A stretch of 64,000 nt of DNA from Tubulanus polymorphus (lineage: Eukaryota > Animalia > Nemertea). The notes under the pieces were generated by a model. That model made no database searches, was not told the DNA's origin, and saw only the letters and a program-made list of their open reading frames with translations. Of this stretch, positions 4,301 to 33,374 are shown in pieces. Positions within the stretch are counted from its first letter, which is position 1. Each line of letters starts with the position of its first letter. Made by a program: the position numbers and the translations under genes. Location: positions 4,984,231-5,048,230 of the forward strand of contig NC_134033.1 of the NCBI RefSeq assembly GCF_964204645.1. The letters are read 5' to 3'.

Positions 4301-4429
4301 TTCTAGACTGATATCACCAATCACACTTTATATAACAAGTCATACTTTATATAACATATCGCACTATCCACAGGTCTATATATTGTTTGATATGAACGAT
4401 TTCCACAAGGCGACTAATCTCGAGTTGAA

Positions 4430-5310
4430 AGGCCTTCCCAAATAAAAAGGGAATTTCTTTTTAGTTCCCTTTTTAGTCCTAATTCCTGCAATATGAATAT
4501 AAACACAGAATACACTTCTCCATAACCAAAAACAACTGATTCGCGTCTACAATACAGTAAAAATGACATTTATTAGTTCACATAAAACAGAATCTTACAT
4601 ACAAAATCAAGAGCTTTGAGTCCTGAGACTCAATCAATCGGGTTACATGATTCCAGTTTTGTAGTTAATACAAGACATTGAGTCTCAGGACGCATTTTCA
4701 AAAATTAGTTCGAGGTATTATTTGTATCGGGTCTTAAAACATGCATTTTAGGAATTGCAATATTGATATGATAAGAAATTAGAATCGAGTCTTGAGACTC
4801 ATTTTTGTATCTACTTTTCTAAATTGCGTCCTAGGACTCATTCATCGTTAGAGTCGAGTCTTGAGACTCATTTTACTAAATTGCGTCCTAGGACTCATTC
4901 TAAAACGTTCACTGGTTTGAATCGTTAGATTCGAGTCTTGAGACTCATTTTAGTATCTGCTTTTCTAAATTGCGTCCTAGGACTCATTCATCTATTGATT
5001 CGAGTCTTAAGACTCATTTCAGTATCTGCTTTGCTAAATTGCGTCCTAGGACTCATTCATCGTTAGATCCGAGTCTTAAGACTCATTTTAGTATCTACTT
5101 TTCTAAATTGCGTCCTAGGACTCATTCATCGTTAGATTCGAGTATTGAGACTCATTTTAGTATCTGATTTACTAAATTGCGTCCTAGGACTCATTCATCG
5201 TTAGATGCGAGTCTTGAGACTCATTTTACTAAATTGCGTCCTAGGACTCTAACGTTCTAAAACGATCACTTAATGAATCATTCGATTCCAGTATTGAAAC
5301 TCATTTTAGT
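4430..5310 (+). repeat. Left terminal inverted repeat with subterminal 69-bp tandem array of 14-bp palindromes
   Basis: Alternating GAGTCTT(A/G)AGACTC and GCGTCCTAGGACTC boxes; 69-bp period seen at 5002, 5071, 5140, 5209. Confidence 0.92.
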
Positions 5311-6419
5311 ATTTTCTGCACCAGATTTCAGGACGCATTTTAAAACGTTCATTCAAGATTAGTAATTTTGATAGGAGGATTTGAGTCCTCAGCTCATTTG
5401 AGCCGCGGATGAAAAAACAGTTGAAAAAGCCACCATGGTTTATGGAATACATGTATGATAGATAATCAGGCTTAATAGATACTTTTAAAACTGAGAATTG
5501 GATATCCAAAAACAGCAGATCTTCTGGTGAAAGTACTTTACAAACTTCTATACGACAATAATGCTAATCGTGGGCTATCATAAGTCTATCATAAGCTAGG
5601 CCACAAAGGAAACCATCATGGGTCGTTATCGGAAAAGGACAATATACAAACACACAAAATTGCAATATACAATCAAAAATCGATAAGGGATTAAAATTAA
5701 AGAAAAACATTACGGACAAGCCCATTGTAAGTAAACTACCCAAATCCAAATATAGAAACAATTCAATCAAGCGCACATAATTAAACAAAAATGAATGAGA
5801 CATTGATGTGCTCCTTATACACTACAGTAAACCTTGTATATTACGATTCCAGAAAATATATATATATATATGTCATATCCAAAATACGGTGTACGGATTT
5901 ACCGATGAAGTTTCAATGCTAGTATAGTGGAATTAATATCTGAATGTATACTTTAAAACAAGAGAATATCCATAGGGTGTACATGAATAATGCTTATGAC
6001 GTCAACAGCAATATCTTATTTCACCTTTTCAATTTTTATCTACGATTTGTCTCAAAAAGTGGTTTTAAAACTTCCCGATAAGAGGCAGAACAGTAGTATT
6101 AAAACCGATCATGAAATCTTAGCTCCTTACAGCAGCTTTCCTTTTTCCGATACGTTTCGACGACAATTTAGTTGATTTGGCTTACTGGGACCAAATTAAT
6201 CATGCAGTGATATGTTATATAAGATACGGTCTATTCGATGATTTCGCAAAGGTTTGATAGACGGAAAATTCAGGACTAAAAATAAAACGTATAAATGAGC
6301 TAACACCGACAGCTGTTGTGTGGTAGTTAGCAGTCAGAAAGCCGTCATAATATAGTTTGCCGAGACATGTAATATAAGCAAAACAATTCGACAATATAAA
6401 TTAATTTAGAAATCGAAAA

Positions 6420-9400
6420 TCAAAAATCGAGTCTAGTAGTGAGGGCAGCCACTATCCACGAACTATTGACTCCGTTTATTTTCTTTCCGTCAACGACACT
6501 GGCGCCGGGAACCACGAAAAGGACTTGTTTGAGTTCCTGCCGATCGTGAACGTCTAAATTTGATAACGAGTCATCATCGAGTACGATAGATCCTGATAAT
6601 TTCCTGACCGGCCTTCTACAACTAATTAATTGTTTTTTGGATACCGCGGCCACGTAAATTCCGTAATTTTCCCAATCAACGAGAACTACGTCTCCGTCGA
6701 CGACCTGGATATTCTTAGCTCCCTCGCCTGTAATATAACATACATAAACGGGTTTTAGTGTAGAACACATTCGTTTATGTTTTCATTCTAAATGAGTAAA
6801 AAACCGCAGTCGAAACGCTCTGCGGACAAAACATTACGAGGTTTATCCCTAGTTTGTCAAAAGTTAGCAGTTAAAAGTGACTTCGAATCGGGATAAAGCT
6901 GGATTTGTTGTTATGTGTGCGCAGGACGCTTTCGTAGAATGAGCGTATTGTATCCAATGTATTCACTCTAGTGTTAACACGATGACATACCCGGTTTGAC
7001 GAGAAGATTTTCACCAACGTCTGGGCAAACGACGTTAATATCCAAGCCAGGAACAGCCTTTTGAAAACCCTTTGACGACGGAAATTTCATTATTTGAAAT
7101 CGCTTACCTTCTGTCTTTTCGGTCGCCTTTCATAGGTAGCGCCTGTGGTTACTGCTGGTCGCTTCTAAAAATAAATATTCATAATTAACACTGAATTGCG
7201 TGTACCGGTGTATTATTCTTCATTGGGTTCATTTGTAGCGGTTCAATAAACCACTGGAAGATATTCAGTACAGAGACTTTGATCTTAGCCAATAGGCCGA
7301 GAAGCGACTACGATTACGATTACGATTACGATTACGATTACGATTTATTTACACTCCAACCATTTCCATGGTATATGGAGGAAAACTATTACACATGTAT
7401 ATACAAATATTTACAAAACAACACTGAAGTGATTAAAATTTAGAGAATGAAAACGTAACGAAATATATATATACATCAACTATTTACAATACTATATATA
7501 CTATTATATACATCAACTATTTACAATACTATATATACTATTGGAGGGATCTATATACATCTAAGCCGGTCTTAATGAATTTAGCTAAGTTGACCGTTGG
7601 GTTTTTCAGAATATCAAGGGTATTTAAGGTGTTCAAATTCAAAAAGTTTTTGCGTTGTTCGTTAAGTAAGGTACAGTCAAAGAGAAAATGGGATTCGTCA
7701 CCTAAAGTATTACAAGTGGGGCATATTCTATCGGCTCTGTCTGCGACTCAAACCGGTACGTAGCGCCGCCTGGATATTTTGCGTTAAACTAAAGCGTATT
7801 CTGTTTCGCACATAAACCATGCTATACCGGGTACTGTGAATATAACAAAAAGATGAATAATTTACCTGCAGCTGGGTTTGTAGTTCGTTTATTTTAGCCT
7901 CGAGGCACTCCTTTTCTTTCTGAATAAAAATGAAATGATTGTTTTTAGTTCCATGCAGTTCAAATGTATCAGATAACTAAGCCTACACATTCGGTTTAAA
8001 TGCCTACCTCCAATACTGATATTGTATGGTCACTGTTCTTGAGTTTTAACAGCGTCTCTGAATTCACATCCTACAATTGAACGACGAATGCACGCATTAA
8101 CAGCATAATCGTATATTCTATTTAACGGAATATCAACTCGGGATAAACGTACCTTCTGTTGTTTCAGTTTTGCCTTCAAATCACTGACCGCCGATCTTAG
8201 TTCGTTGTTTTTCTCCTGGAATATAAAGAAATGAAATCTCCTTAACTACATAATAGATATACAGGCTCTAATAGGCTGATGCTTAATTATATAATTTAGT
8301 CTAAAATTATTACATTTCCGATTCTAAAAATTATATACCTTTATTTTGACAAGATTTTCATTTAATACAACATTTCTTTCTGTGTTCGTGACCTATAATT
8401 AGAAATATTATCACGTTATCATAATCAACGACCTAACAGTGGGTATTAAATGGAAAAACTGTTGGAATATGCGACAATTACCTTTTCAGTCAAAGCTCGA
8501 TGATTGGATGGTGCTGTCGTTTCATCATCTTTTTGTTGGTTTTCATTGATGTTCTAGAGCAAACAAACACTAGATTTAATTAATCGAATTTGACGCATGA
8601 AAGATATGAATAGGACGGTCTCTCGGTGTTTCATGTTAAGGTAACGTTTTTTTGTCATAATTACCTGATTTTCGTTAACACTTTCCTCCTCCGTCTCATC
8701 TACTGACATATTGTTTTTTCCCGATATTTCGTTCCTATCGATATCGGATTAAGAGAGTAGAAAACATCAATTTTTGCACGTGCATTAAGGAAAATTATAA
8801 AATGATTTCGAGTGCCAATTTTATTCACCGAATATCGTTCTTTTACTTACGCGCAAATTTCCAAGGCAGTGGATAAATCCATCGCCCTCTAGCCATATCG
8901 ACGAACACAGCCCGTAACTTGTTGCCTGATTTGACACGGAAAAATTTCCGTGCCACATGTCGAGTAAGCGGCCCTTTGTTGTTTTTAACATTCGCCCAGT
9001 TCTGGTTTAGATTAGTCCAAGCGTCAAATGTTGGTTTGTCCAATTGGGCGAAAAATATCGCGATATTCATTTTGTTGTTTAGTGCTTTTCTCTGAAATAA
9101 TCATCAACAATTATGTGCAGATATTTCATTTCTGAAACTGGAAGAACAACAGCAAAGAGAAAACAACTCACATTCAACTGATACACTGTTTCGAGCCCTT
9201 TTTTCCATCGATTAACGATTTCGGGATCGTTCGGAGTGTCACCCTCCAGGTCAGTCCTGCCAGCGTGGTGATACAGGCATCGCCGACAGGTTAACACCTG
9301 ATCCGCGAATGTAGCTGGCAGGTATTTCTCGTGCACGGCGTTGTGTTGAATAGCTAACATCCTCGCCATGTCGTCCGGGAGGTCCGACGAATAGGTGTGT

Positions 9401-11973
9401 ACCATCGCTGAACCATAATGATTCGGATCAGCACCTGCAAAGATTCGGATCAATTCTAATTGATCAATGCTAATGTCGGGCTTGTTTTAAAGTAAATGAA
9501 TGACTTAATTTCAAATCGCGTGTAATGCAACACGAAGTTAGACAATATCGGTTCCTAGGAATGCTGCATTTGTTCTTTTAAACAAATGTAGTACAATTCT
9601 GTGACGCACCTTCAATCAAAAGCTCATGTAGCGCGATTCTGGTGTGGTTTCCACCCAATATTTCGATAACATTTTTTTCTAACGGAGAGATAATGGGCCC
9701 TGTAGCACGACCTACGAGGGACATAAAGTTTGATGCAGGGCGTGCCAGCATCTCAGATTTCAAACTGTCCACGTGTTTCCGATCCACACATCGCACCTGG
9801 AGTGGCCACGACGGAGCTTTTAGCTTTTCGGTCGCTATTCTGTATGTACCTACGGAAAGAAAAATAGTTATCATTTCACATGTTTTTCACTCTTTCTTTT
9901 CATTTTTTGGATGTTTAAAAACTCGATATGAAAGTTTTACAAATTTGTCAGATTGAACTGTGACCCATGGGTAATTGTAAACATTATGCACGACTGATTC
10001 TTTTGGGATGACCATAGTCTCATTTTCTTTATGGTAGCTAGCCTTATCTATTAAAGCCAGGGTGATGCATGATGCATCGGAAATTAGACACTGATAACGA
10101 AAACGATTTGAAAATCAGCTCACCTTGTCTGAAGCGTATGACCTGTTTTTGAAGCATATCTATACAGGAAAGAAAGGGGATAAATTAAATTGATATAATT
10201 GAATAATCTGTTCGAAGCGATTATGAAATGCAAGATGTAATCTGGTCGACTTACCTGAACAAACCGATGAAGATCTGTTTTCAGTACATGTATTTTCAAT
10301 TTGTTGTACATGCATTTCTGTAAATATACCACGAATGGAAATATATAATTATAGTTCTCTAAGTGTCACCATAACTTAACTCATTAATGTTGAATCTAAT
10401 TCGATTCTTACTTGATAATCAAATTTTTTCTTCCAATTTTGTATTACTTCAGAAATGAGGAAATTGACGTAATATGTTTTCAGCAAATTATATGGCATGT
10501 TGTTTTTGTCTGTGAATTTCTTTATTTCCCGAAAGTAATTAAGTGAAAGTAACACATGAAGACCTACCATCACGACATTTTAACAATTCCGATGGTTCAA
10601 GGGATTTTACTTCATCACAACCTACAAGAGATGAGATTTGTAAATTGTTAAGTCTCAATGAATTCTGATAGCAACTCGTAGTGTCCGGAGTTGTTGTAAC
10701 ATTGAATTAAATACGTTCCTGTTTGATTGATGGATGATTAACACTTTGTTTTCGATATGATCTCGAAAAGTCGCTCGAAAATATAGAACAAAACAAGAAT
10801 GGAATTTGATAAAAATGTAACACTTCACTCAATTCAGATATGATCAACTCGGATATCTTATCACATCTCAATTTGACGTCACTCAAGTTGGACACATGTC
10901 TACCACCACTTAAGGTCGGAAAGTATAATCAGGGAAGTGTGACACACTTCCCTGGTATAATCAACTACTAGAGAGCATTCTACTGTATTCTAAGTCATAT
11001 AATGAACTCAAACCACTCGAATCACTCTTGGAGAATAACAAACATATCACCAGCGGAGGTGTGGAAGAGACCTCACTTATTTCACAAAGGCAAAATTGGT
11101 GTTATTTTTACACTCTAATACAGCTCGGAATAATGATATCTTAAACAATACATACCATTAGTTGAATCACCGAGGGCAGTGTTTAAGTGGAGTCCATGGA
11201 AAGGATCTTGTTCTAAATAGAAATAATACATTTCAAATTAAGAATTTATTTCAATGATTATATTAATAATGACATTTTTTATAATTTGTATAATAATTCA
11301 AGTCGCGGCATGTAATTCCATGCGATTATTGACCTATGTAATTCCAGCATTTATTTCGATATAGAACAACCCGGGGCTGATGTTATGGGCGGATTCATTT
11401 TAAAAAAGGGCCTTGCGAAAATTAAAGCAATAGGGTATGGGCGGCCATCCCCGCCAAACAGAAGTTTAGGTCATCACGTGAAGGATAAACTCAAAAATTG
11501 AAGTATAATGTAGTATCGTGGGGGATAAACTCATAACGTGACAGATCAACTCAGCTACCTTCCCTTTGAGCCAAAATGTAATGTGATGGCCGATCCAGTA
11601 CGAAGTAACATTTCAAAACATCTACTGTTAACGAAAAATTCCCCGAACTCTTGAGTCGGTATTCGATAGAATTAGAACAGAGAATAGGCGGAGTCTACTG
11701 TAGGCAATGACGTGCATTCTGAGCGTACTTTTGCAATGTAATATAGACAAATAATTCGCAATCAAAATTCATGGATCCAGCAAACTACTTGTTATAAATG
11801 TTTATAATAAGTAGCTTGAAAAATTCCACCCCTTTCATGTTTTCATTAAATGCTTACTCGGAGAGTTCTTCTGGGTGTCAATAATGAAACCTCACCATTG
11901 AATGTATAGATGTCGTTCGTTTCAAAAGTGTCATCAGAAGTACTTTTTTCATGGCGTATTGGACTTTTATTAC
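6420..11973 (-). CDS. Multi-exon transposon cargo gene: ParB/Srx-like domain + coiled coil + bipartite NLS + Tudor/SH3-like C-terminus
   Basis: Exon ~9610-9849: GTYRIATEKLKAPSWPLQVRCVDRKHVDSLKSEM...IEILGGNHTRIALHELL. Exon ~9172-9434: DDMARMLAIQHNAVHEKYLPATFADQVLTCRR. Phase-0 microexons with GT/AG ends at about 8482-8553, 8339-8392, 8153-8215, 8008-8070, 7866-7919 and 7108-7164 (KRPAVTTGATYERRPKRQK). Last exon 6420-6727: VVDGDVVLVDWENYGIYVAAV. Upstream exons at 10.1-12.0 kb and two exon joins are less certain. Confidence 0.72.
7276..7307 (-). pseudogene. 5' fragment (~32 nt) of U2 snRNA
   Basis: Minus strand reads TCGCTTCTCGGCCTATTGGCTAAGATCAAAGT, matching the conserved U2 5' end (AUCGCUUCUCGGCCUUUUGGCUAAGAUCAA...). 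Confidence 0.85.
7308..7762 (-). mobile_element. 5'-truncated non-LTR retrotransposon 3' end (RTE-X-like) with (TCGTAA)n tail
   Basis: Minus strand encodes ADRICPTCNTLGDESHFLFDCTLLNEQRKNFL...LAKFIK (C-terminal zinc knuckle of LINE ORF2), then AATAAA and a hexanucleotide tail at 7308-7343. Confidence 0.75.
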
Positions 11974-14867
11974 CTGTAAAAATTTAAAATCAATCTCATG
12001 TTGAATATACAATCGATATAAACATTATCTCACGTTAGTTATTGCCGCGTAGTTGGTTTGGATTTTGTCGTTGCGGTTTATTTTTCGACCTAAGTGTATT
12101 GCATTTTCTTAAACCGAGATTAGAGTGAAAACGTGTATCTATTTACACGTCTATAATTGCGAATCGTAACTAAAACGCTGCATCTATAAAAGGCTACGCT
12201 GAGCCTGTTATCCGCTTTAGTAATGTTTGATTACTTGATAATCAGCAAGACATCATTGATTAACAAAATGATGTAATAATAGCCTTTACTTGGGAATTTG
12301 ACGCCAACGTCGGATGGCAACGGCGGATCTTGGCTCTGATTCAGTGAGGAATGCCCCCCCCCCAAGAATAGGGCATATCGTGATAAAAAGGGGACCCCGA
12401 AAAAAAACCAATAGACAAAAATTAACAGTTTTCTTTAGAAATACTTATGAATTTAAACTTCTTTTGGTATCAATATTTCTCGTTTACTCGTAAATTTTCA
12501 GCGCAACTTGATAATAATGTCTAGAAGGGGACCCCCGGCCTGCACTCTCTCATTGGAACCACGCCTGGAGAGAGGGTTACAGGGCGAGAGAGGTGATCAG
12601 TATATTTGAGAGTTTCTAATGAGCGTCTGTTATGATAACGGCTGAAGGTTTTAGGTCACACGTGGCCTGTGTTGACCACTAGACTGGATAAACTAAAAAT
12701 AGAAAATTCGCGCTTTGGAAAAGTTCGTTAGCTTTTAATTTTAAGTCTTCTAGTTACACCCACACGATTTCCGTCGAGAGTTCGAGCACAAATATTACAA
12801 TGAAGTGATTTCATCAAATACAAATTTAGTGACTCAAGGGAAGGCTCAAAACTTCTGGAATCAGTCCCACACGTGGTATCTTATTTATCTAAACGTTTTG
12901 TTTATGTTAATCATATATTTGTAGCTTTGTAAACCAGGCCATTTCACGCCTTTTTGATAATGTTAGCTATTAGTAGTTACTATGTAGCACGTGTATCTTT
13001 GTGTGCACTAGCAAAGAACCCATCCCGGTGGAGGCCACTGGTGGCGGTATGATACTATCAGTGAGCCTAAAAATAAACGACTGCGACTATGCCGTATAAT
13101 GTTATAAGTCATTGAAGCAGTGGTGATATGTTTTCCGTGTTTATCGCAGTTCCCGCATTTCTTTGGACTGACAAAATTGGCGTTTGATATATCAAACAGA
13201 TAGCTATATGCAAAAAGTCGCTAAGATAAATCACGGACTCTAAAACGAATAAATACATTATCTCCACTAACATGAGGCAGATGAAGCGGGTTCAGGTCAC
13301 ACGCGTATCTGCCGGCAAGCACACGATGGTTCGACCACACAACTTTTTGAAGCTCGATTTCTCAATTATTGTTGACCCGGTTGGCAAAATAAATAAAATT
13401 TGTGTCTTAATTTTTGTTCACACACACACACAACACCAGCTGAGCGTAGATGCAGCAGTGCATTGACCCATACATGGATGAACAAGAAATCATAATCAAA
13501 AATATGATTGTCGATAAACGAAATCAGTCATCAAGTACTACGGATATCAATTAAAATGAGTATCATTATATCAACTATGTGAGAGTCACTGAAGTTGATT
13601 CGATACGATTTTTATCAAAGGTTTAGTCTTTTTATTGTAGAAATATATTGCCTTCTCTTACCAGAAAGGAAGACTATTAAAAATGCGCCAGATTGGCTAG
13701 ATTTTTCTCTAGCCAATATAGAAGTATTTCTCTCGACTAGTCGAGACGAGAGTTGTGTCGAGGAAAATCGGGCGTAACAAAGTCGAGGAGTCGAGAGTAA
13801 TCTAACCAATCAACATACAGCATATTCGCGCGCATTTTGACACAACTTTGTTTATTTTTCTATCAGAAGTTGAGAAATCGAGAATTTGAGACAACTCAAT
13901 TTCTCTTCAAAAAGTCGAGTGTGTGATGCTAGGTTTACACACACACACGTGTACATTCTAAACTGATCTACGTAATCAAATATGAAATTTTTCTGTTATT
14001 ATCTAAATTGTGGATACTTTTCCAAAACTAAAAGAGATCATTTTTCGACTTTCTGGCATATTTTTCTAACCTTCCAATCATCTCAATGTAAATAAAGATA
14101 ATTATTATTCATTATTCTATATCAAACAAATGCCAGTATTACTGTGTCCGAATAAAGCGAGGTTCCCTTTTATATAATGAGATCACATCGTCGAAAACTC
14201 AGGCGATTTTTAGATCTATTGAATATATTTCTAGATCTCGGTTATTGTCATTTTTCCCATTGTAGAATCTCTCATTTCATGCTTATGTTACTAGATACAA
14301 AATCTTAAGGTAACTTACGAGAATCCTCTAATAACAATTCATTAAACGCCTTCACAAATTCTGATCTCGAGTTCACTGTCCGCTTTAAACATTCGGGGAG
14401 GTTTTCGGTGATCAACTGGGACAGCTTGTAGCGCTTTGTGGTATTCGAAGTCGAAATCTGTGGAAAAAAGGTTGCGTTATAGAGCTCTGTTCACGTTCAC
14501 TGTAAGAGAAGCGAAATTTGAACTTACATACCTTCACCCATCCAATCGAGCCGGCTTGTTTTATGTCTTTTATATGTACAGAGATATCGTTGTCATTAAC
14601 CAACCATGCGTCGTTTCCGTGAAACGTAAACCCCACGGTCCTTCGACGTTTATATTGCGATCCATCTTCACGTTCGTTTTATTTTCGGATACTGAAAAAA
14701 TATAATAGTAGATATAAAAGGTTCATCCTCTGGAAATCCTATTTCAATGTCTTTGCTATCGGGAAAAACATTTGTATTTCATTTCATCGTTTTTGTTGAA
14801 GAAGAGCAGTTGTTAAAATACAATACATGGGTGTGTTTAGGAGTAGGCCTAGTGATGATTTTAACAA

Positions 14868-15437
14868 CAAGCCCATAGCCAGGGGGGGGGGGTTGTCCGT
14901 TCGAACGAACGCCCCTTTATAGGAAATGCCCTTAGTGATTTCGGTAATTTTTTCAGCCAACTTGTTACGAATTATTACACGCTTTATTACACTTGTTTGA
15001 GGTCAATTGATCATCGCTTTTGCGCATCAATCGAAACACTACTGCCTGAGCTATCGAATATGTAAAAGGGTTCAGAGGCACCACTTGAGATGTTCAGTGT
15101 AGGCCACATCCTACCAGCGACTCAGCAACAGATTCAAATTCACCAGCTGTTGCAAAAATATACGCGGGAAAAAACCTAAGACGAATGTAGTTAGCAAACA
15201 TTTTAATTTGAACTATTGAACATCCAGAGTTACTTCTATTAGCGGTGAATAAATGTCATTCTCACATTTCAAATGGTTATACTGAAATGCATTTGTTTTT
15301 TTTGTATTGTTTGTGGAATAACTACAGAATTCTGTTTTTAAGCACACGATGCTCGCTTTCCTGGGATACAAAACATGCAGAAGTGCCCTTTTTATAATTC
15401 AAACAACGCCCATTTCAAAATCCGGGCTACGGGTTTG
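14868..15437. mobile_element. MITE-like non-autonomous element
   Basis: Imperfect TIRs CAAGCCCATAGCCAGG / CCGGGCTACGGGTTTG with a G-run after the left TIR; no clear TSD. Confidence 0.55.
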
Positions 15438-18549: not shown

Positions 18550-18614
<65 letters not shown>

Positions 18615-23872: not shown

Positions 23873-23966
23873 TGGACCCAGTTAAGAATTAAATGTACAG
23901 TTAGTAAATATTATGAACTATTAACTCGAGAGTTAACTCTTACATCTCAACTGTGGAACTGGGTCC
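23873..23966. mobile_element. Short TIR element (~95 bp)
   Basis: TGGACCCAGTT ... AACTGGGTCCA inverted ends with internal palindrome TTAACTC.AGAGTTAA. Confidence 0.5.
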
Positions 23967-25224
23967 AATATAATCTTTTCTCATGCAACTAAGTAGGCTC
24001 CTCCCATCCAAAGAATATTCCAGCAGCCGCCTGGATCAAATCGACCACCATTCCCTCTGTATTGAAATAACCCAGCATCGGTCCTGAGATCATGGACGTA
24101 TAAACTAGATTATAAGTCCATGTTCTAATGAAGACCCAGTCTTTCATCGTCATATTATACATCTAACTTTGAAGGAAAAACAATCCCATTAGTTAGCTGT
24201 TACTAGATTTGAATGACCTGTATTAGGTTCTTAATCTCTCGATGAAAATACATGTGTAATTGGAAAGATATTTCATGAACTTCCAGATTAAAATCATAGG
24301 TTAATTCGTGTACTGAAATCTTTATATATAGCGTTTTAAAAATTGTTTTGACTGTTCCTGAAAGTTGATGAGAAAACACAAAAATACGACTTGGGGAACT
24401 AGCTGTGTCTAAATGGATACAAGATATCAAAATGTTTTAGTAATTTAATTGAATAGCTCAATGTGAATCCTAGCTATTGTAACTTTTTGAGCCAACAGTT
24501 ATCAAATAAGGGTTTTTAGTTTAGATTCAGATTGAATGAATAATATTAGATGATACGCTAGGGCATTAGACTAGGGGAACAAGGATTATAAAACAAATAA
24601 GAATTAGAAAATGTGTAATTGGGATATCTAGGGACGGGAGTGTATATAGTATAGTGAATGGATTATCATTATTAGACAACTCTTGAATATATGGCCTCAA
24701 GCCCGGGGAGAGTGGTCGTCAGTGTGAACATCTAAGACTGTTTGGATAACTATTCAGTTAACAATTTGTACATTAGCAAAACAATTGCTCTGACTTTGGC
24801 TCTGACACATTGACAATAAATCCTCTCAACCTCTTGACACTACGAAGTTTGGATACAAATTTGAGAATGTTCACTCGGGTAGCACATCGAACCCTCCAAT
24901 CGTAGACATTTTTAGGAACTAATTCAACGAATAGTTGCATAATTTGGGATAATAAATTTGATAAAATGCAATATTGAACGGAGATCAGGGTCACAACTAC
25001 TACGGGTCAGTCACTGGAAGATTGAGCAAGAGCTACGAGCAATTATCTGAACGTTTAGATAATTGCTCGTAGGCAAGAGTAAATAAAAGAACATATAACA
25101 GCACGCGAACCTTGGATTTATTTTTGTAGAGCGGGAAGAACTATGTAAGTCATTGTTTACATGTGCTAGAATTGTTCTGCTCTATACACAATTCAATTCC
25201 TTCAAAGGTTGTGTCATAGATGAA

Positions 25225-25425
25225 AAGTGGCTTTAAGTTTGTAGAGATCATTTATTTTGAGAAGTTTTAATAAGCTGTTTGAAGCGTGGTTCAGAGTGGG
25301 CAGTGAAGTTAGGCTTGGTAATAATTCGAGTTAGTTGTTTTTGAAGCGAAATATATTTTTTTGTGTTTATGGTGAGTGACCCCATGATAATAAACCATGT
25401 TTATATGAGGAAGGACAAGTGCATC
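25225..25425 (-). mobile_element. Decayed L2/CR1-group LINE fragment (RT C-terminal region)
   Basis: With frameshifts reads ALVLPHIN.GLLSWG...LQKQLTRIITKPNFTAHSEPRFKQL.KLLKINDLYKL. Confidence 0.65.
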
Positions 25426-25875
25426 GATCGAGGATGAGTTGATTTTGGTTTAGAATTTGACTGCATTTATAGATGATACCCAGGCCTTGTGAAATTATTT
25501 TGTGACCTTTTCGGTCATATCCATCGATACGCGCGCACCAAAGTCAGTTGCTAAAAGTTTGATATACGCTAGATTTAAGGGATAATATAGTAACGGGCTG
25601 CGAGAGAGGTCAACGAGCCTGCAACCTTCTCTACAAATAATTCATTTCACACGTTTTTCCATCATTTCCTTTCTTTAAAAAGCAGAAATATGACGGTGGA
25701 AATATGAAACTCCAATACACGAAAATGCAAGAATATGCGATTTTTGTTCGTCGGCATCAAATGCTTTAGGGCCTATGTATACGAATTCACTAAACAGCAT
25801 GAAAATATATTAAGTTCTAATTTTTGAAGTATATTAGCATTTTGTAATTCATTTGTCTTAATTTCTATTTGACAG

Positions 25876-28800
25876 CTGACACAAACATGTTTTCTGCTAG
25901 TACTCCTAAGAAATCCAGACTGAGTGTATCAGACCATACTCCAGGTACCTATCATGACCTACTTTTTACTATTTCTATGCATCTACAAATTGTCGTTTTA
26001 GGAGTAATATCCGCTGTATTGATTGATGTATCGATCGCTACTTTAAACGCATGTTTTCAATCTCCTCAGGTTTAACCGCCATTCTGAGTAATGAAACAAA
26101 CAGCGCCGTTGAAGAAAGTGTTTTTGAGGAAAGCGTCTTCAGTTCAGGTAGATTTTCTGAGGAATTTTCCAAAAATGATGTATATTAACATAACTGTGAT
26201 GCACTCATACCATAAAATGATTTGTTTTTCATGATTCTACTTGTAGCTTTACCCGGCAATCCGTGTGAATCGAAAGATATCCTAAATGAAAGTGTTTTTG
26301 AGGAAAGTGTCATTAGTGCAGGTAGATATTCTGATATTCCTAAGGATAATTCACATTTATTTTATATCAAGATACCTGTAAATGACTTTAGCGAAAATGT
26401 ACTTTTAGTTCTACCCGGCAACCTGAGTGAGGGGAAAAATGTCCTCGATGAAAGTGTTTTTGAAGAAAGCATAATCAGTACAGGTAGATATTCTGATATT
26501 CCCAGAAATTTCTGTTGCATCAAGATCCTGCACGTACTGTATGTAAACGACCTTTCCTGAAATATACTTTTAGTTTTACCCAGCAATCTGAGTGGAGGGA
26601 ACGAAGATAATAGTGTTTTTGAGGAAAGCGTCCTCAGTTTGGGTAATTATATTGAAGAATTTTTCCAAATAATGTTATTATGATTATGAACCCATGATGT
26701 AAAACAACTCTTTTCATGGATCTACTTGTAGTTTTACCCTCTCATCCGATTGAGGCGAATGATATCCTAGATGAAAGTGTTTTTGAGGAAAGCGCCGGAG
26801 TAGGTAGATATTGTGATATTCCCAAAATGATAATTTCTGTTACATCTAGATCGAACTTTGTGAAACGACATTTCCTAAAATATACTTGTAGTTTTACCCC
26901 ATGGTCAAATCGAAGAAAGTATTTTTGGAGAATTTTGCATCAGTTCAGGTATATATGTATTATGATTTTCACTCCCAAGACAATAATCTAAATATTAATT
27001 ACAGCAACTTATTCATAGAAAAGAACACTTCTACCAATTAACTTTTAGAGTCACCAAGCAATGCGTGTTGTGAAATGGACAGCAGTGAAGATATAGAATT
27101 TGAAGAACATGCGACCAGTTCAGGTAAAATATATTTTTTTTCAAGGATTTTTCTGGTTTTCCAACCAACGACAAAGTGAGAACATCAATATGGTATTAAA
27201 CAGAATATTAAAAATCTTATCTAATAATGATGAAATATGAAAGCAAAAGTGTGCAATTATCAATTTTGTTTCATTTGTATTTACCGAATATTGATATCAC
27301 ATTACATTCAGTTGTCTTTTGCGATTTAGTATGTCGAATTCACTTTTAACAGATAGTCAACAACAACCCCTGGAGAGCTCGCTTATCCTTCCTCATTCAA
27401 AGTCACGCATAGCCGAATCTAGCAGTAAGTATAATAGGGGCGAAAATAAGCAATTTCAATTTAGGAATTTATGCAGTTTACATAGTTGGGTTTCAATAGT
27501 TTTAAAGTATTTTCCACTAACCCGATGAAGCATTTCTCTTTATAATTGCAACGGATTTTCTGATGAAGCCCATAGAAATATAACAGAACCAAACGGGTAG
27601 TCTAATATTTCACCGTCGCCAATGGGGGCGCCACTGCCATAAACGTCGAGAAATTTACACTCGAGGTTCTGTTAAAAGGGACAGTGTGCCTGTATTAAAC
27701 TTTCAAATAACCCATTCCTTCTGTTGATGTTACAGCAGTAGCCTACATGACAATCCCCAATATTCACTGATAGCCTTTACAGTGTATAAGTATGCCATTT
27801 CAGAAACGATCAATAATTATAAGAGATAATACAGTCAATTAAAGGCGATAAGCTACGCTTTCATATTGTCAACGCGGAGTCCAGTAAATCCGTTGACGAC
27901 AGAAATTGCGGCTATTGACGGTCAGATATCAAACGGAACTAGAAGCATATCCAATTCTTTTATGACGTTTTTCTATTCGTTTCTAAGAAGAATGTTCTCA
28001 CGAATTTCATTTTCTCTAATATTGAAATGGAAGTTGAAAACCAAAAACACAATTCCATAATCTCTATTCATGCATCAATCTCTTTTCAGGATATCCCAAA
28101 GAAAGTCTTTTTAACAAAAAAACATCATCGACAACGCTATTGAAATCTCTTCATGTGATCTGTAAAAAACATTGTACCGATTTTCTGCACATGGCTGATA
28201 TAAAGAACCTGCGGGAATCCTATTGGTGTCGCAATATTTCGGATCGTCATCAATTTATCGTGGACACTCTGCAAACATGTACGCAGAATACATCACGCAT
28301 TAACCTTACTGTCATGGGTAGATCTGTTTGCCAAGGCTGCTTGTTAAATGTCTATGGCATCAGTAAATCGACGCTTTACAAAATCAAGTCGAAACAGGAT
28401 AAGTCAGAATGCCCGGAGAATATATCCATCAGAAAATCTAGCCCTGAATTCGTTGAGGCAACTTCTTGGCTCTCAAATTATTTGGAAAATACAGTACAAT
28501 CTGCTCCCGATAAGACTGAAAAATGGCTTCCACAGATATTCCGAAAAAATTGACCTCTACCGGGAGTACAAAACAGAAAAAAACGACAACAATGATAGAT
28601 ATGTCAGTCAGTCTACATTTTATCGGATCTGGTCAGAGTTGTTCTCATTTGTCAAAATCAAGAAGGTAACTTATTGCTTCACTTTGCCTACATATTTCAA
28701 AAATAAATTGACATTTTCTAATATGAATGATGCTTGAATGTTTATAGGGTAGTACATTCTCGAAATGTGACGATTGTGTGAGAATCCAACAATTACTTCA

Positions 28801-30779
28801 ATCAACGCAGAACCCGATATCCCGCAAGGAAATAATGGCAGAAAAACAACGCCACATTTCTACAGTAATGTAAGTACGTGTAAATGCATCGTATCTAATA
28901 AGCAGGCTGTTCGAATTGCCATACCGCACTTGGAATGTTGTTCCAATCTCAGTGTTTGATAATTTAAAAAAACCATCATGTATTTCTCTGCTTCAGGACT
29001 GAGAGACTCGCCTATTATGCACGCGTTCGTAGAGCGCAGACGAATCCGAACCGTTACGTTAGTTTAATAGTCGATGGTATGGACCAAACGAAGTAATTTC
29101 TTCCACATTTTGCCGGAGAAAAAGGAAAGGTGAGCAACTCGTCTAGCCACCTTATTGTCATTTAACTTACGATTTATCGCAAATTTCCCATAAATCTAAT
29201 CCAGTTGTATTACCCGGTACACAAACCATTCTATAGAACTCCCCAGTAATTAACCTCCAATGGCGTACAATGATAATGACATGTTTGATAATAAACAAAA
29301 ACCCACTGTAAAACATATTTAATATGCATTATTTATCATAGCCTTTTTGCACTATATTTTCTAATTACCGGTATTTCTCTTTTCAGTTCATGACAGCTAC
29401 TAGTTTACTAAAAACACACATAACTGGTGTGATAAGTCATGGTCATAAACTATCTCAGTCGTATGTCGATTATCATCTTTATCCACACGACAGCAACATG
29501 ACGATGAATGTTATTCTCAAGACATTATGGCGTATATCTAAGGTAAGACGAATATAAACAATTTAATACCGGTACACATTTCTATGTCAGCAAATGTGAA
29601 AAGAAATGTTAAATTCATTTATTTAATGTTAAATTCATTTATTTACTTTTTGAGAATGGTCAACTGCCATCGCATTTGTATTTGCAAGCCGACAACTGTG
29701 GCCGCGAAAATAAGAACAAATACGTTTTAGCCCTCTTGCAAATTCTAGTAGAGAAGAAAATATTTAACGAGGTGAGGAATCTGCTAGTTGCAGGCTACTA
29801 ATAAATGGAGGCTTTCAATTAAGAAGCAACGCAAATACTCACTTATGTGTACCTCTGTTCGGTAGAGATTACATATATCGACAAACTTGTACCTAACTAC
29901 ATGTATTGGCAAGTTATGCAGTTTCTACTGCAATAGATATCATGTCTCATATATATTTCCACGTGGTATATCTTTTGAACTTATAACTTGAATTCAGAAC
30001 CATACATCGCACCCGTATTATTGTATGGGTTATGAGATCGAAAATTCTAAAGACGAACTATTTCAATCATTTCAGATTCAGTTGAGTTTTCTCTTCGTTG
30101 GTCATACGCACGAAGACATCGACCAGCTGTTTAGCGTGTATGCCGGATAGGTTGAGAAGAGAAGATGCATTCGATATGGCCGGCCTGCTCAAACTGTGCG
30201 ATGGTATCGAGTTGGGAGGGTTGTTGGATATTCGATCTTGGCTTGCTCCACATATCGTCAACATGAAGAACCATTCGAAACCAAGGATATTTCTATTTCG
30301 AAGGGACAGCCAAGATCAATCCCAAATTAACATGTACTATAGGAGTTCATCAACTCAGGAATGGCACTGCATGGAAGGCGGAGTATTGACAAGTATACCA
30401 ACTGGTACTCCTTCAGTGCTCGATTTAAATTATTCAAACATCGAAATCAAGGATATGAAAAAGAATATGGAGAAATGGAAAAGCTTTTTACCACAGGAGA
30501 AACAAGACTGGTGGAATGATTTCCTCGATACCATTGAAACTAAGACAGTCAAGCTAGCAGAATCTGCTGCATGGTACCTTCCATATTTGAAGGCACAGGA
30601 AGGCATTGAACAGGATATCAATGAAAAACACGTTGAGTTACCGAATCCTTCAGTAAGTACATGTATATTGCGGTGATTCATACTGATAGATATCTATCTA
30701 TTTGGAAGTCAGCCTTTACGCTAGATCGATCTATTCATTCATACATGCACACATTCTCTTTCAGATCGTCGTTTCGTGA
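25876..30779 (+). pseudogene. Intron-rich Sola-like (DUF7869-type) DDD transposase, inactivated
   Basis: Spliced exons give WLPQIF..DLYREY...VSQSTFYRIWSELFSFVKIKK / GSTFSKCDDC / YVSLIVDGMDQTK*FLPHF / THITGVISHG...YPHDSNMTMNVI / LYLQADNCGRENKNKY / LSFLFVGHTHEDIDQLFS. Lesions: frameshift ~28545-28550, TAA at 29094-29096, frameshift ~30145. Confidence 0.82.
26070..27123 (+). repeat. Tandemly duplicated exon+intron units (~160-170 bp) in the transposase N-terminal region
   Basis: Exons 26070-26147, 26247-26321, 26409-26483, 26574-26642, 26732-26803, 26892-26948 and 27049-27123; most encode variants of LP.N...ESVFEES..S.G. Confidence 0.8.
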
Positions 30780-32479
30780 TTTTGAACCTGAATTCGGGAC
30801 ATTTGATTAGTATGCAGCAAAATATATATCTGACAGGTTAGTATTGATGGACCACTTTTAATTCAATAATTCACCAGTTTTAGTTCACTTCACTTAGCTC
30901 TAGTTTGGTGATGCCCTAATTTGAAAAAATGACATTTCTACCGAACTATTCAATTGCAGAATCAATGTAAAATGCGTGGGGCTTGTATGCCCATTCATTT
31001 GTTGTAATAATCTGTCCATAGCCTTCTTCAATACATCTCGTTTTCATAACGTCATTCAAAAAGAAATGTACTGAATAAGGCTTATTAAATATTAAAATAA
31101 ACACTTCCTTAGATAAATTAGCACATCTGCACATACTGCACTTTTTCTGCATTCTGCTTCCTAGTGGTTTTTTAACTCGATAGACTGAGTGATATACAAT
31201 AGTACTGAATTCCAGTTGACTATGAAAAAACTGTGATATACTGTGTGGGTATAGTGTAGACTGAGCGTAATGTGTAGACTCGACATCGGCCCAAATATGC
31301 ATATTTCAAGTCTCGCATTTCAAAATCACTCTATCGTCAAAGTATGAATATTTCTTGTATTTGTAAAGTGGTCTATAAACTGCATTTTATCTTAAGGCCG
31401 AATCTAATGTTTCCTTAATCGATAGTTTGAAAATACGTCTTTAATGCATTTGAATTTTCAATAGCATTATTAAAATTTGTTACTTATGATTATAGGTAAT
31501 TGTTAGGATCATTCATTATAATATCTGAATCGTTTGAACTTCAATGCGAATTCAGTTAGCGCATTATCTTTTTTTTTTTACTTTCAGGGACACTATCGAG
31601 TGCGCTGGAGAAGATTAATTACTAGTGAAATGCCGATCCCCTAGCTTAAGGGCTAGAACAGTCGCCTATCAACTTATTTCACGCTGTCCCCTCTCTGGGC
31701 CAACTGCACCGCTGATTGCCAGGGAATGAGATGTCCCAGTGACCACGTTTGGTTCCGCGATGGAACCATGTTAAACAAAGTGTAAATTAGGAGTGTCCTG
31801 TTCTACAGCAATTGCTGACCGAAAATACAATGATTGTCACTGGAGACTGCACTCCAACACAGTTAAAGTGTGAGTTTTACCCTATCGAGAGATAAGCATA
31901 ATGGAGGGCAGGATAATGCCCCGGAATGACATAAAGGCAGCGCCTGTTGGAATGATTTCAATGTATTTATTAATTTTTGCATTTTTAAATAGGTTCTAAA
32001 AGTTTTGGTTTTACGTAGCTTAACGGAACAGCATTATGTTTACATAGTCAATGATATCCAGGATCAGCCTAATCATTCTATGTATAAGTCCAATCTGTCC
32101 GTGATATTATTTTTTGATGTTCATCCTTATGGATTTTGAATTATAGATTGCATAATTATTCGTGATTACAGCATCGTGAATGTACGAGTATAGTAATGTC
32201 GTGTAGAATGTTTGTACACTACTTCAGCGGGAATATCTGCTGTTTTTAGAGTAAATCAAAAACCCTCCAAATGAGTAAATTTTTGTATCATCGAATATTC
32301 AATTATAAGTTTTAGTATCCTTTAGGCTTTATCATATATTGTACATATAATGTAATTGGAAACACTATGGTGGCTTTGTCAACTGATTTTGATCCGCATT
32401 TAGATTAAGCAAAACACTCAAGACTAACGATTCCTTAAATGGAGGTTTCTTAGTACGAAATTATGTGAAGCAAACACTA

Positions 32480-33374
32480 AAATGAGACTCAAGACTCGAA
32501 TCTAACGACGAATGAGTCCTAGGACGCAATTTAGCAAAGCAGATACTAAAATTAGTCTTAAGACTCGAATCTAACGATTCAAACCAGTGAAAGTTTTAGA
32601 ATGAGTCCTAGGACGCAATTTAGTAAAATGAGTCTCAAGACTCGCATCTAACGACGAATGAGTCCTAGGACGCAATTTAGCAAAGCAGATACTAAAATGA
32701 GTCTTAAGACTCGAATCTAACGATTCAAATCCGTGAAAGTTTTAGAATGAGTCCTAGGACGCAATTTAGTAAAATGAGTCTCAAGACTCGCATCTAACGA
32801 TGAATGAGTCCTAGGACGCAATTTAGAAAATCAGATACTAAAATGAGTCTCAAGACTCGAATCAAACTATGAATGAGTCTAAGGATGCAATTTAAGAAAA
32901 GTAGTTACTAATATGAGTCTTAAGACTCGAATCTAACGATTCCGCGGGTGGGCCTTTTGTAATGAGTCCTAGGACGCAATTTTGAAAACCTGATGCTAAA
33001 ATGAGTCTCAAGACTCAAATCTAATTTCTTATCATATCAATATTGCAATTCTTAAAATGCATGTTTTAAGACCCGGTACAAATAATACCTCAAACTAATT
33101 TTTGAAAATGCGTCCTGAGACTCAATTTCTTGTATTAACTACAAATACTTGAATCATGTAACCCCATTGATTGAGTCTCAGGACTCAAAGCTCTTGATTT
33201 TGTATGTAAGATTCTGTTTTATGTGAACTAATAAATGTCATTTTTACTCTATAGTCGACGCGATTCAGTTGGTTTTGGGTATGGAGAAGTGTATTCTGTG
33301 TTTATATTCATATTGCAGGAATTAGGACTAAAAAGGGAACTAATAAGAAATTCCCTTTTTATTTGGGAAGGCCT
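32480..33374 (-). repeat. Right terminal inverted repeat with the same palindrome array
   Basis: Boxes GAGTCCTAGGACGC / GAGTCT(C/T)AAGACTC repeated about 17 times; 33000-33374 mirrors 4430-4800. Confidence 0.92.

What the first reader, a model, noticed from the sequence alone, without database searches (positions are those of the whole stretch)
4430..33374. 29-kb DNA transposon pairing a Sola-like transposase with a ParB/Srx-fold nuclear protein
Seen: matching ~0.9-kb inverted ends 29 kb apart, enclosing two divergently oriented intron-rich genes that each point toward one end. Established: DGMDQ / DNC.RENKN / GHTHEDIDQ resembles the Sola1-type DDD triad region, and some DNA transposon superfamilies carry a dedicated second gene (Harbinger Myb, Academ RecQ, Kolobok KolX). 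Inference: the ParB-like gene is a dedicated partner of this lineage. I do not know of a characterised animal cut-and-paste element defined by a ParB-like partner, so this may be an undescribed two-component system. This copy is decayed and inflated by nested MITEs and LINE fragments.
Basis: partly seen in the sequence, partly recalled or inferred. Interest (0 to 1): 0.92.

Follow-up and report, generated by a model that had tools for sequence, protein, structure and literature searches.

The report
Giant Sola1 transposon with ParB-like partner
This is a real 29-kb cut-and-paste DNA transposon of the Sola1 kind in an invertebrate genome. Besides its (here broken) transposase it carries a second conserved gene, a bacterial-type ParB DNA-clamp protein with a Tudor-like tail. 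That pairing has so far been reported only in algae.

Summary
Window 4429-33375 (28,947 bp) is one element, bounded by ~0.9-kb inverted ends. It is collinear at ~95-97% with at least two other full-length copies, which carry 4-bp target duplications (AAAG, ATCT).

The + strand gene (28.1-30.7 kb) is a Sola1-type DDD transposase (Pfam DUF7869; same blocks as the curated Ectocarpus Sola1-1). In this copy it is broken by two 1-nt insertions and a stop.

The - strand gene (about 9.9-6.4 kb) belongs to a family whose 245-aa representative folds confidently (pLDDT 95). It matches ParB/Spo0J/Noc/KorB across both the N-terminal and the DNA-binding domains.

Two further families in this genome, only 30-41% identical, keep the same back-to-back gene pair. 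One (49-52 kb) does so inside its own 3.6-kb inverted ends. tblastx between two families finds only these two genes conserved. An unrelated public contig shows the same pairing. Each family's ends carry arrays of its own 14-bp palindrome.

The novelty claim shrinks. A Sola1 element with an opposite-strand ParB-like gene was published for Ectocarpus in 2025, and ParB-like accessory genes are known in red-algal Plavaka elements. New here are the animal host, the ParB/coiled-coil/Tudor-like build, and the conservation across families. The scan's first readers also noted ParB-plus-Sola pairs elsewhere in this genome. The mechanism is inferred only, and no RNA data were found.

The parts
4429..5318 (+). 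Left terminal inverted repeat: a unique outer ~350 nt, then an array of 69-nt units
   Evidence: terminus fixed by 18 other ends in the genome
4618..5249 (.). About 16 copies of the 14-bp palindrome GAGTC-N4-GACTC / GCGTC-N4-GACTC in the left end
   Evidence: 0.07 expected
6423..6782 (-). Last exon of the ParB-like gene: conserved C-terminal barrel-like (Tudor-like) domain with core GDVVLVDW..YG; the stop follows 6423
   Evidence: Conserved at 32-40% in families F2 and F3. The Mytilus homologue P0080 ends in a weak Tudor_3 match.
7208..7811 (.). Nested high-copy repeat inside an intron of the ParB-like gene; it carries a LINE-like C-terminal zinc-knuckle ORF at 7541-7747 (-)
   Evidence: Depth is about 100-fold above the flanks in DNA contigs; ORF. 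The LINE-like reading is by eye.
7731..8748 (-). Short ORFs with coiled-coil-like sequence, presumed middle exons of the ParB-like gene (exon limits not verified)
   Evidence: The matching coiled-coil segment in P0080 is read by eye from the sequence. No RNA data.
8846..9100 (-). Exon C ORF of the ParB-like gene
   Evidence: 35% identical to F3 over 81 aa. No significant pairwise match to P0016.
9082..9486 (-). Exon B ORF of the ParB-like gene (conserved core 9166-9417, HN motif)
   Evidence: 32-38% identical in F2, F3 and the C10/C2 copies. hhalign probability 98.5%, E 2.5e-15, to residues 80-161 of the modelled ParB-like protein.
9608..9853 (-). Exon A of the ParB-like gene: the ParB/Srx N-domain core with the invariant GGNH motif
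   Evidence: Member of alignment A4, 41% identical to P0010, whose model matches ParB.
9900..28000 (.). Family-specific interior with no conserved coding sequence. It includes a nested ~470-bp high-copy repeat at ~15970-16443 and ORF-bearing ~160-bp tandem repeats at ~26100-26990.
   Evidence: tblastx F1 against F2 finds only the two genes. The genome search matches mostly other copies of this family. Few ORFs and no Pfam hits.
28164..30673 (+). Sola1-type DDD transposase pseudogene (at least 6 exons). Lesions: a 1-nt insertion near 28544, a stop at 29094-29096 just after DGMDQTK, and a 1-nt insertion near 30145.
   Evidence: Pfam DUF7869 on four exons, E 1e-17 to 7e-7. Lesions found by alignment with copies B, C and D. 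35-57% identical to F2 exon by exon.
32428..33375 (-). Right terminal inverted repeat with about 16 palindrome sites (32484-33186)
4418..4428 (.). Left flank. This copy has no clean 4-bp duplication (TTGA against TAAA at 33376-33379). The two 11-nt flanks match 8/11 in inverted orientation.
   Evidence: unexplained

Best explanation
Window 4429-33375 is a non-autonomous (mutated) copy of a giant cut-and-paste DNA transposon family of the Sola1 superfamily. This lineage carries two conserved genes placed back to back, each reading toward the nearer end. One is a multi-exon Sola1 DDD transposase. The other is an accessory protein built from a ParB-type module (N-terminal ParB/Srx domain plus helical DNA-binding domain), a coiled coil and a C-terminal Tudor-like barrel. 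Shown here: the element's limits, its copies and 4-bp target duplications, the identity of both genes, and the conservation of the pair and its orientation in three families at 30-41% identity, one of them shown inside its own TIRs, plus one unrelated contig. Also shown: the ends of two families carry family-specific arrays of a 14-bp 5-4-5 palindrome. Inferred, not shown: the transposase cuts at the termini and makes the 4-bp duplication. The ParB-like protein is inferred to bind the palindrome arrays as a dimer and build a higher-order complex on both ends. That complex would help pair ends lying 30-50 kb apart, or regulate the element. This resembles what TnpA does for En/Spm and the Myb-like protein does for Harbinger. 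The Tudor-like tail may tether the complex to chromatin.
For: One element: copies B (C9:4232628-4262232) and C (C6:17690597-17718215) are collinear with the whole window interior. Long aligned blocks are about 95-97.5% identical, with some interior stretches at 85-93%. They end at the same bases and have TSDs AAAG and ATCT. Sola1: Pfam DUF7869. The blocks FYRIW, VDGMDQ, DNCGRENKNKY and VGHTHEDIDQLFS parallel FNRIW, MDGANQ, DNTVAENKNNY and VGHTHIQIDQIFS of the curated Sola1-1_Ec32 transposase (PMC12477816 supplement). That element has 4-bp TSDs and AACCG termini; family F2 here starts AACCTCG. ParB: a profile search found about 50 homologues. The AlphaFold model of P0010 has pLDDT 95.1 and pTM 0.90. 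The top 34 Foldseek rows are all ParB-type proteins (Spo0J, Noc, ParB, KorB, pNOB8 ParB, PadC), the first 17 at probability 1.00, and the ParB, Noc and KorB rows span about 210-246 columns. VIA-align gives KorB Z 9.9 with 185 residues aligned and ParB Z 9.1-9.7. Window exon A is in that family and exon B maps to it at 98.5% probability. Partner: all ParB-like loci in the genome and all DUF7869 loci were listed. Families F1, F2 (C8:2858417-2907359, 48.9 kb; C4:5822826-5874964, 52.1 kb, TSD AAAT) and F3 (C6:14475005-14490378) all show ParB(-)...Tnp(+). For F2 the pair lies inside 3.6-kb TIRs. tblastx between F1 and F2 finds only these two genes. A contig from another assembly has the same divergent pair 7.5 kb apart. 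Palindromes: GAGTC-N4-GACTC in F1 and GAGGG-N4-CCCTC in F2, both confined to the ends.
Against: No transcript evidence: the only public runs holding this DNA read as unspliced DNA contigs. Exon limits and expression are therefore unverified. None of the four F1 copies examined has both genes intact. The window copy lacks a clean TSD, as does the C8 copy of F2. Seven of eight homologues examined in other organisms had no Sola1 transposase within 10 kb. One of them sits beside a tnp2/EnSpm-type transposase instead, so the ParB-like gene is not exclusive to Sola1. Other DUF7869 lineages in this genome have no ParB-like gene nearby. The palindromes could equally be transposase binding sites. The ParB call for the window's own protein goes through homology to a modelled relative. 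A model of exon A alone was poor (pLDDT 65) and matched nothing.
Confidence: 0.85

Rival explanations
1. The ParB-like gene is passenger cargo (a captured host or foreign gene) with no role in the element's life cycle, like genes in Pack-MULEs.
For: Giant transposons often carry cargo (PMC6431247). Bivalve homologues are annotated as ordinary uncharacterised genes. The Mytilus homologue has no Sola1 transposase within 10 kb. Copy C lost ParB exons yet keeps open transposase exons.
Against: The pair, its order and its orientation survive divergence to 30-41% identity in three families and in one unrelated contig. It is the only other conserved coding sequence between F1 and F2. No TE-free paralogue appeared in this genome. 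Ectocarpus Sola1 also carries a ParB-like gene on the opposite strand.
Confidence: 0.08
2. The ParB-like protein is needed by the element, but for dealing with the host rather than for end pairing. It would act as a KorB-like sliding-clamp repressor or anti-silencing factor that controls the element's own transcription or chromatin. The palindrome arrays would then be transposase binding sites.
For: The best structural match is KorB, a ParB-type clamp whose PDB entry title calls it a transcriptional repressor. The algal ParB-like accessory proteins are fused to DNA methyltransferase or 2OG-oxygenase domains, and their authors suggest they modify the transposon's own DNA. The Tudor-like tail points to chromatin. 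The transposase has a weak N-terminal HTH match.
Against: No enzyme domain was found in this gene. ParB-type proteins typically recognise short inverted repeats, and such repeats are arrayed exactly at the ends and change along with the protein family. Nothing here separates this reading from the end-pairing one.
Confidence: 0.3
3. The two genes belong to two different mobile elements, one nested in the other, or the two ends belong to separate elements.
For: The window copy has no matching TSD. In another organism a ParB-like gene lies beside a different transposase type.
Against: Three copies share the entire interior from end to end, and two have perfect TSDs. No internal TIR pair was found. 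F2 has different TIRs but the same gene pair inside them.
Confidence: 0.03

Closest known systems
Sola1-1_Ec32 of the brown alga Ectocarpus (Genome Biol 2025, PMC12477816)
   Same: Giant Sola1 element (21.5 kb) with long TIRs (282 bp), a 4-bp TSD and AACC-type termini. [quoted passage not shown] The transposase shares the same conserved blocks.
   Different: The algal protein is 1104 aa and fuses ParB to a DNA methyltransferase. Here there is no enzyme domain but a coiled coil and a Tudor-like end. The host is an animal. The elements are 29-52 kb, with 0.9-3.6 kb TIRs that hold palindrome arrays. Homology between the two ParB-like proteins was not tested, because the algal accessory sequence is not in the held supplement.
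Plavaka (CACTA-like) giant transposons of red algae with accessory gene PAG3 (bioRxiv 10.1101/2025.02.11.637652)
   Same: A ParB-like N-terminal domain in an accessory protein, with tandem arrays of inverted repeats next to the gene. The authors propose that the protein binds its own transposon.
   Different: A different transposase superfamily, and ParB is fused to a 2OG oxygenase. One ParB-like homologue found here in another organism does sit beside a tnp2-type transposase (L059).
Bacterial and plasmid ParB family (Spo0J, Noc, KorB)
   Same: Same two-domain fold (N-terminal ParB/Srx domain plus helical DNA-binding domain). A Gly-rich motif with a conserved Arg (GGNHTR) sits at the start of the helix that follows the third strand, where ParB has GERRxR. 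The candidate binding sites are short palindromes in arrays.
   Different: Sequence similarity is below the Pfam and PDB profile thresholds. CTP binding is untested. The gene is eukaryotic with many introns, the C-terminal dimerisation domain is replaced by a coiled coil plus a Tudor-like barrel, and there is no ParA partner.
Two-gene DNA transposons: En/Spm (TnpA plus TnpD) and PIF/Harbinger (Myb-like protein plus transposase). This comparison rests on my own knowledge, not on a test here.
   Same: A second element-encoded DNA-binding protein and subterminal repeat arrays. The accessory protein is thought to bring the ends or the transposase together.
   Different: Unrelated protein folds and superfamilies. 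The function here is inferred only.

Membership tests
Sola1 superfamily of DNA transposons | Transposase homologous to curated Sola1 transposases, with the DDD catalytic blocks | tested here: met
   Pfam DUF7869 on four exons. Block-by-block match, read by eye, to Sola1-1_Ec32_tpase in the supplement of PMC12477816, whose best blastp hit is Repbase Sola1-1_PPa. No direct Repbase or Dfam comparison was possible.
Sola1 superfamily of DNA transposons | 4-bp target site duplication (reported preference AWWT) | tested here: met
   AAAG (copy B), ATCT (copy C), AAAT (F2 copy on C4). The length is met. The AWWT preference is only loosely met (A first). The window copy and the F2 C8 copy lack a clean TSD. 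The hallmark is cited from PMC3845634.
Sola1 superfamily of DNA transposons | Terminal inverted repeats bounding the transposase gene | tested here: met
ParB/Srx superfamily (ParB-type two-domain proteins) | ParB/Srx N-terminal fold followed by a helical DNA-binding domain | tested here: met
Met for the family representative P0010: pLDDT 95.1; Foldseek probability 1.00 to Spo0J, Noc, ParB and KorB; VIA-align Z 9.9 to 9.0. Window exons A and B belong to that family.
ParB/Srx superfamily (ParB-type two-domain proteins) | Sequence-profile membership (Pfam ParB_N or clan relatives) | tested here: inconclusive
   No Pfam hit for the window exons. DndB is weak in 6 of 42 family members, best E 1.1e-4. 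phrog_723 'ParB-like partition protein' gives E 7e-4 for the F2 exon. PDB profile searches were empty.
ParB/Srx superfamily (ParB-type two-domain proteins) | CTP binding and hydrolysis, and binding to a parS-like palindrome | not testable with these tools
   GGNH is invariant, R is nearly invariant, and a conserved HN follows. Palindrome arrays are present. This needs biochemistry.
Giant DNA transposons with ParB-domain accessory genes (algal Sola1, Plavaka, Mutator) | ParB-like accessory gene inside the TIRs of a DDE/D transposon of more than 10 kb | tested here: met
   F1 (29 kb) and F2 (49-52 kb).
Giant DNA transposons with ParB-domain accessory genes (algal Sola1, Plavaka, Mutator) | ParB domain fused to a DNA- or chromatin-modifying enzyme (methyltransferase, 2OG oxygenase) | tested here: not met
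   No such domain in any ORF of the gene or of the interior, nor in the 826-aa Mytilus homologue, which has only a weak Tudor_3 match. Small undetected exons cannot be excluded.

The most novel reading that the evidence does not exclude
A ParB-type clamp protein with a chromatin-reading Tudor tail is an obligatory second component of a giant Sola1 lineage. It loads on the family-specific 14-bp palindrome arrays at both ends and pairs ends 30-50 kb apart, or tethers the excised DNA to chromatin. This would amount to a plasmid-partition-like module working inside an animal cut-and-paste transposon. The Sola1-ParB link would be ancient, shared from brown algae to animals, rather than assembled twice.
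Probability: 0.3. Interest if true: 0.85.

Novelty: new variant of a known kind. Interest (0 to 1): 0.62.

Why it matters
Cut-and-paste transposons of 30-50 kb are rare in animals, and how their distant ends are brought together is not known. This family offers a concrete candidate. It has a conserved element-encoded ParB-type DNA binder and matching palindrome arrays at both ends, in at least two families that changed protein and site together. That makes the question testable with simple binding and transposition assays. It also extends the recently noticed link between ParB-like proteins and giant algal transposons to animals. It gives a function-level lead for a set of uncharacterised proteins in oysters and mussels. 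The F2 family has 49-52 kb copies whose sampled end segments are 95-99% identical, and could be a source of a large-cargo transposon system.

Tried and rejected
RNA evidence: the only runs holding the region read as unspliced DNA contigs, and one putative RNA run held nothing. Splice sites and expression stay unverified.

Single-exon searches:
- Exon B against 1.84 billion representatives gave one 100-aa metagenome fragment on a 1.9-kb contig with no context.
- Exon A alone against the 5.8-billion set gave nothing. Only the four-family profile worked.

Exon A folded alone from a 4-sequence alignment gave pLDDT 65. It found no ParB by Foldseek, VIA-align wide or the atlas shape search. I treat this as a poor, truncated model, not as evidence against the fold.

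PDB sequence-profile searches were empty.

A joined (spliced) protein model of either window gene was not built or sent to any tool. Exons were searched one by one by reference.

Papers: the Yuan & Wessler 2011 and Bao 2009 papers on Sola are not held. Sola1 criteria therefore come second-hand from PMC3845634 and from the Ectocarpus supplement.

Neighbourhoods: of eight ParB-like homologues whose contexts could be read in other organisms, one had a Sola1 remnant within 10 kb and one a tnp2-type transposase. Two further look-ups (P0003, P0005) found no record. With gene spacings of 11-31 kb in this genome, a 10-kb flank is too short for a fair test.

Exon C showed no pairwise similarity to the bivalve proteins.

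I considered and dropped the idea that the 11-nt inverted match of the window copy's flanks extends the TIR, because all other copies end at 4429/33375.

Full report

Yes. A self-comparison of window 3000-35000 finds inverted arms at 4418-4660 and 33144-33386 that are 95% complementary. Further arms run inward to about 5318 and 32428. The inner halves are tandem 69-nt units.

A search of the window's own genome with the left end found 21 matches. That genome is 268 Mb in 77 contigs, and the window is C9:4984231-5048230. All other ends start at the base that is window 4429, with the sequence AAGGCCTTCCCAAATAAAAAGGG. The element is therefore 4429-33375, or 28,947 bp.

**2. Is it one element?**

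I fetched three other copies and aligned them to the window.
- Copy B is C9:4232628-4262232.
- Copy C is C6:17690597-17718215, in inverted orientation.
- Both are collinear with the window from the first to the last base. Long aligned blocks are about 95-97.5% identical, and some interior stretches are 85-93%.
- Copy C has a 2.1-kb deletion (window 7681-9795).
- A fourth copy, on C36, is split by large insertions.

Copy B is flanked by AAAG on both sides and copy C by ATCT. These are 4-bp target site duplications.

The window copy has TTGA on the left and TAAA on the right, so it has no clean duplication. Its two 11-nt flanks match 8 of 11 bases in inverted orientation. I cannot explain that.

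The 18-kb interior (window 10000-28000) matches almost only other copies and fragments of this family. The exception is one ~470-bp high-copy repeat near 15970-16443. A second high-copy repeat lies at 7208-7811.

So the ~29-kb size belongs to the family and is not an accident of this copy. The nested repeat at 7208-7811 is shared by copies B and C. The element therefore moved after acquiring it. The same was noted for giant Ectocarpus elements.

**3. The transposase**

Four + strand exons between 29342 and 30673 match Pfam DUF7869, with E-values from 1e-17 to 7e-7.

The supplement of PMC12477816 prints the curated Sola1-1_Ec32 transposase. Read side by side, its conserved blocks parallel those of this gene:

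| Sola1-1_Ec32 | This gene |
|---|---|
| FNRIW | FYRIW |
| MDGANQ | VDGMDQ |
| VDNTVAENKNNY | ADNCGRENKNKY |
| VGHTHIQIDQIFS | VGHTHEDIDQLFS |

That element is recorded as 21,549 bp with a 282-bp TIR. It has AACCG...CGGTT termini and a 4-bp TSD, and its best blastp hit is a Repbase Sola1. A 4-bp TSD is the cited Sola1 hallmark.

I therefore file the transposase under Sola1. I could not compare it with Repbase or Dfam directly.

The window gene is dead. Aligned to copies B, C and D, it has the following lesions:
- a 1-nt insertion near 28544;
- a 1-nt insertion near 30145;
- a stop at 29094-29096, where the other copies encode Ser.

Copy C keeps all conserved transposase blocks open.

**4. The second gene**

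On the - strand, four ORF segments are conserved at 27-40% identity in other loci of the genome:
- exon A, 9608-9853;
- exon B, within 9082-9486;
- exon C, within 8846-9100;
- exon G, 6423-6782.

The exons alone gave no Pfam or PDB match. Exon A folded alone gave a poor model that matched nothing.

A profile of exon A from four families then found about 50 homologues in public assemblies, none carrying a Pfam domain. Many of them encode the A and B parts in one piece.

With a 42-sequence alignment, the 245-aa member P0010 folded at pLDDT 95.1 and pTM 0.90.
- The top 34 Foldseek rows are all ParB-type proteins: Spo0J 1vz0, Noc 7ol9/7nfu, ParB 6t1f/7bnk, KorB 8qa9, pNOB8 ParB and PadC. The first 17 have probability 1.00, and the ParB, Noc and KorB rows span about 210-246 columns.
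- VIA-align gives KorB Z 9.9 with 185 residues aligned at 3.8 Å.
- It gives Myxococcus and Caulobacter ParB Z 9.1-9.7.
- It gives sulfiredoxin about Z 6 on the N-domain only.

Window exon A is a member of that alignment, at 41% identity to P0010. The exon B profile maps to P0010 residues 80-161 with 98.5% probability and E 2.5e-15.

Weaker sequence hints point the same way:
- DndB in 6 of 42 members;
- phrog_723 'ParB-like partition protein' at E 7e-4;
- language-model neighbours DUF6551, DUF3723 and ParB_N.

The protein is thus ParB-like in both the N-terminal and the DNA-binding domains, not merely Srx-like.

Cluster members include uncharacterised oyster proteins and an 826-aa Mytilus galloprovincialis protein. 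That Mytilus protein has the ParB-like module, a segment that reads as a coiled coil by eye, a basic stretch and a weak C-terminal Tudor_3 match. The window gene has the same order: ParB-like exons, coiled-coil-like ORFs, and a conserved barrel-like last exon.

**5. Is it a partner or cargo?**

I listed every ParB-like locus and every DUF7869 locus in the genome.

Besides family F1 (this window), two more families keep the pair in the same divergent order.

Family F2:
- It has copies on C8, C4 and C59.
- It is 41% identical to F1 in the last transposase exon and 35-57% exon by exon. It is 32-40% identical in the ParB-like gene.
- The C8 copy runs from 2858417 to 2907359 (48.9 kb).
- Its TIRs are 3.6 kb long, start AACCTCGTCCG, and hold 49-bp tandem units.
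- The C4 copy runs from 5822826 to 5874964 (52.1 kb) with TSD AAAT.
- The sampled end segments of the three F2 copies are 95-99% identical, so F2 moved recently.

Family F3 lies at C6:14475005-14490378, with the two genes 11 kb apart. Its ends were not mapped.

A tblastx comparison of the whole F1 element with the whole F2 element finds only the ParB-like exons and the transposase exons conserved.

With roughly 30 DUF7869 loci in 268 Mb, a chance ParB-like gene has under 1% probability of lying within 40 kb of one. That figure is my own estimate. Three independent families is far beyond that.

Outside this genome, a contig of ENA assembly ERZ25073280 has a ParB-like ORF. A decayed Sola1 transposase remnant lies 7.5 kb upstream on the other strand.

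Two results limit the claim:
- Six other foreign loci showed no Sola1 gene within the 10-kb flank I could read.
- One further locus has a tnp2/EnSpm-type transposase and a SAP-domain protein beside the ParB-like gene.

The module is therefore not exclusive to Sola1. That echoes the algal reports.

**6. The ends**

The F1 ends hold about 16 copies each of GAGTC-N4-GACTC or GCGTC-N4-GACTC. None occurs elsewhere in the 64 kb, and 0.07 are expected by chance.

The F2 ends hold arrays of GAGGG-N4-CCCTC. The geometry is the same (5-4-5) but the sequence differs, as expected for sites that co-evolve with a dimeric element-encoded binder.

Whether that binder is the ParB-like protein or the transposase cannot be told from sequence. 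The transposase has a weak HTH match.

**7. How it most likely works**

Shown: this is a Sola1 cut-and-paste element family with 4-bp duplications and two conserved genes.

Inferred:
- The transposase cleaves at the AAGG/AACC termini.
- The ParB-like protein binds the palindrome arrays and builds a complex on both ends.
- That complex helps synapsis of ends 30-50 kb apart, or controls the element.
- The Tudor-like tail possibly tethers it to chromatin.

A regulatory, KorB-like role is a live alternative. I put about 0.85 on the identity of the element and the partnership. I put about 0.3-0.4 on any particular mechanism.

**8. Known or new?**

PMC12477816 (2025) describes the 21.5-kb Sola1-1_Ec32 of Ectocarpus. 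It has an opposite-strand 1104-aa ParB-like plus DNA-methyltransferase protein.

A red-algal genome paper describes Plavaka accessory protein PAG3. It combines ParB with a 2OG oxygenase and lies next to tandem inverted-repeat arrays.

The 2019 review of giant eukaryotic transposons mentions neither Sola nor ParB. My searches found no report in animals and none of a ParB/Tudor build.

This is therefore a new variant of a known kind: a new host kingdom, a new domain build, and conservation shown across families.

Other first-reader notes of this scan flag ParB-plus-Sola pairs elsewhere in the same genome. They agree with the families I found independently.

Noticed in passing
G000 C8:2858417-2907359, C4:5822826-5874964, C59:3019 to contig end (loci L039-L049, L061-L063): Family F2 is a 49-52 kb Sola1 element with 3.6-kb TIRs. 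The sampled end segments of its three copies are 95-99% identical, and the last transposase exon and the ParB-like exons hit in the genome searches read without stops. It may be recently or still active, which would make it one of the largest cut-and-paste elements in an animal.
   Followed up: partly
L059 (ENA ERZ25068833 contig) 899-2068 (+), 7324-9213 (+), 10001-10429 (+): In another organism a ParB-like homologue lies next to a tnp2/Transposase_21 (EnSpm-like) gene and a 629-aa SAP-domain protein. This suggests that the ParB-like module also travels with a second transposase superfamily.
   Followed up: partly
Proteins P0065, P0066, P0068 (Crassostrea/Magallana) and P0080 (Mytilus galloprovincialis VDI31272.1, locus L064): Bivalves have annotated but uncharacterised homologues. 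The 826-aa Mytilus protein shows the full ParB-like, coiled-coil and Tudor build. The oyster form recurs as ~1-kb contigs carrying a complete 245-aa ORF in many public runs, which may be transcripts.
   Followed up: partly
window 26100-26990 (+): About 160-bp tandem repeats about 1 kb upstream of the transposase exons carry open frames with a recurring acidic motif (ESVFEES...GRYSDIPK). They are conserved in copies B and C. Their function is unknown: possibly 5' exons, or a promoter-proximal repeat.
   Followed up: no
window 4418-4428 and 33376-33386: The flanks of this copy match 8 of 11 bases in inverted orientation, and there is no 4-bp duplication, unlike copies B and C. Possible causes are insertion into a palindromic site or a later rearrangement.
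   Followed up: partly
G000 C10:8119898-8120467 and C36:87617-88186: Intronless 317-aa ORFs match the whole DUF7869 model (E 8e-73) with no ParB-like gene detected nearby. This is a separate, apparently single-gene Sola1 lineage in the same genome.
   Followed up: no
G000 C12:10509330 (+) and C12:10822913 (-): Two F1 ends lie 313 kb apart with identical 30-nt flanks and equal divergence. They look like a large inverted segmental duplication rather than one element.
   Followed up: no
G000 C10:9275510-9276944 and C2:13396294-13396569 (L051, L052): A fourth ParB-like family has at least two near-identical copies, with no DUF7869 hit within hundreds of kb. These may be truncated or non-autonomous elements, or have a partner too diverged to detect.
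   Followed up: partly
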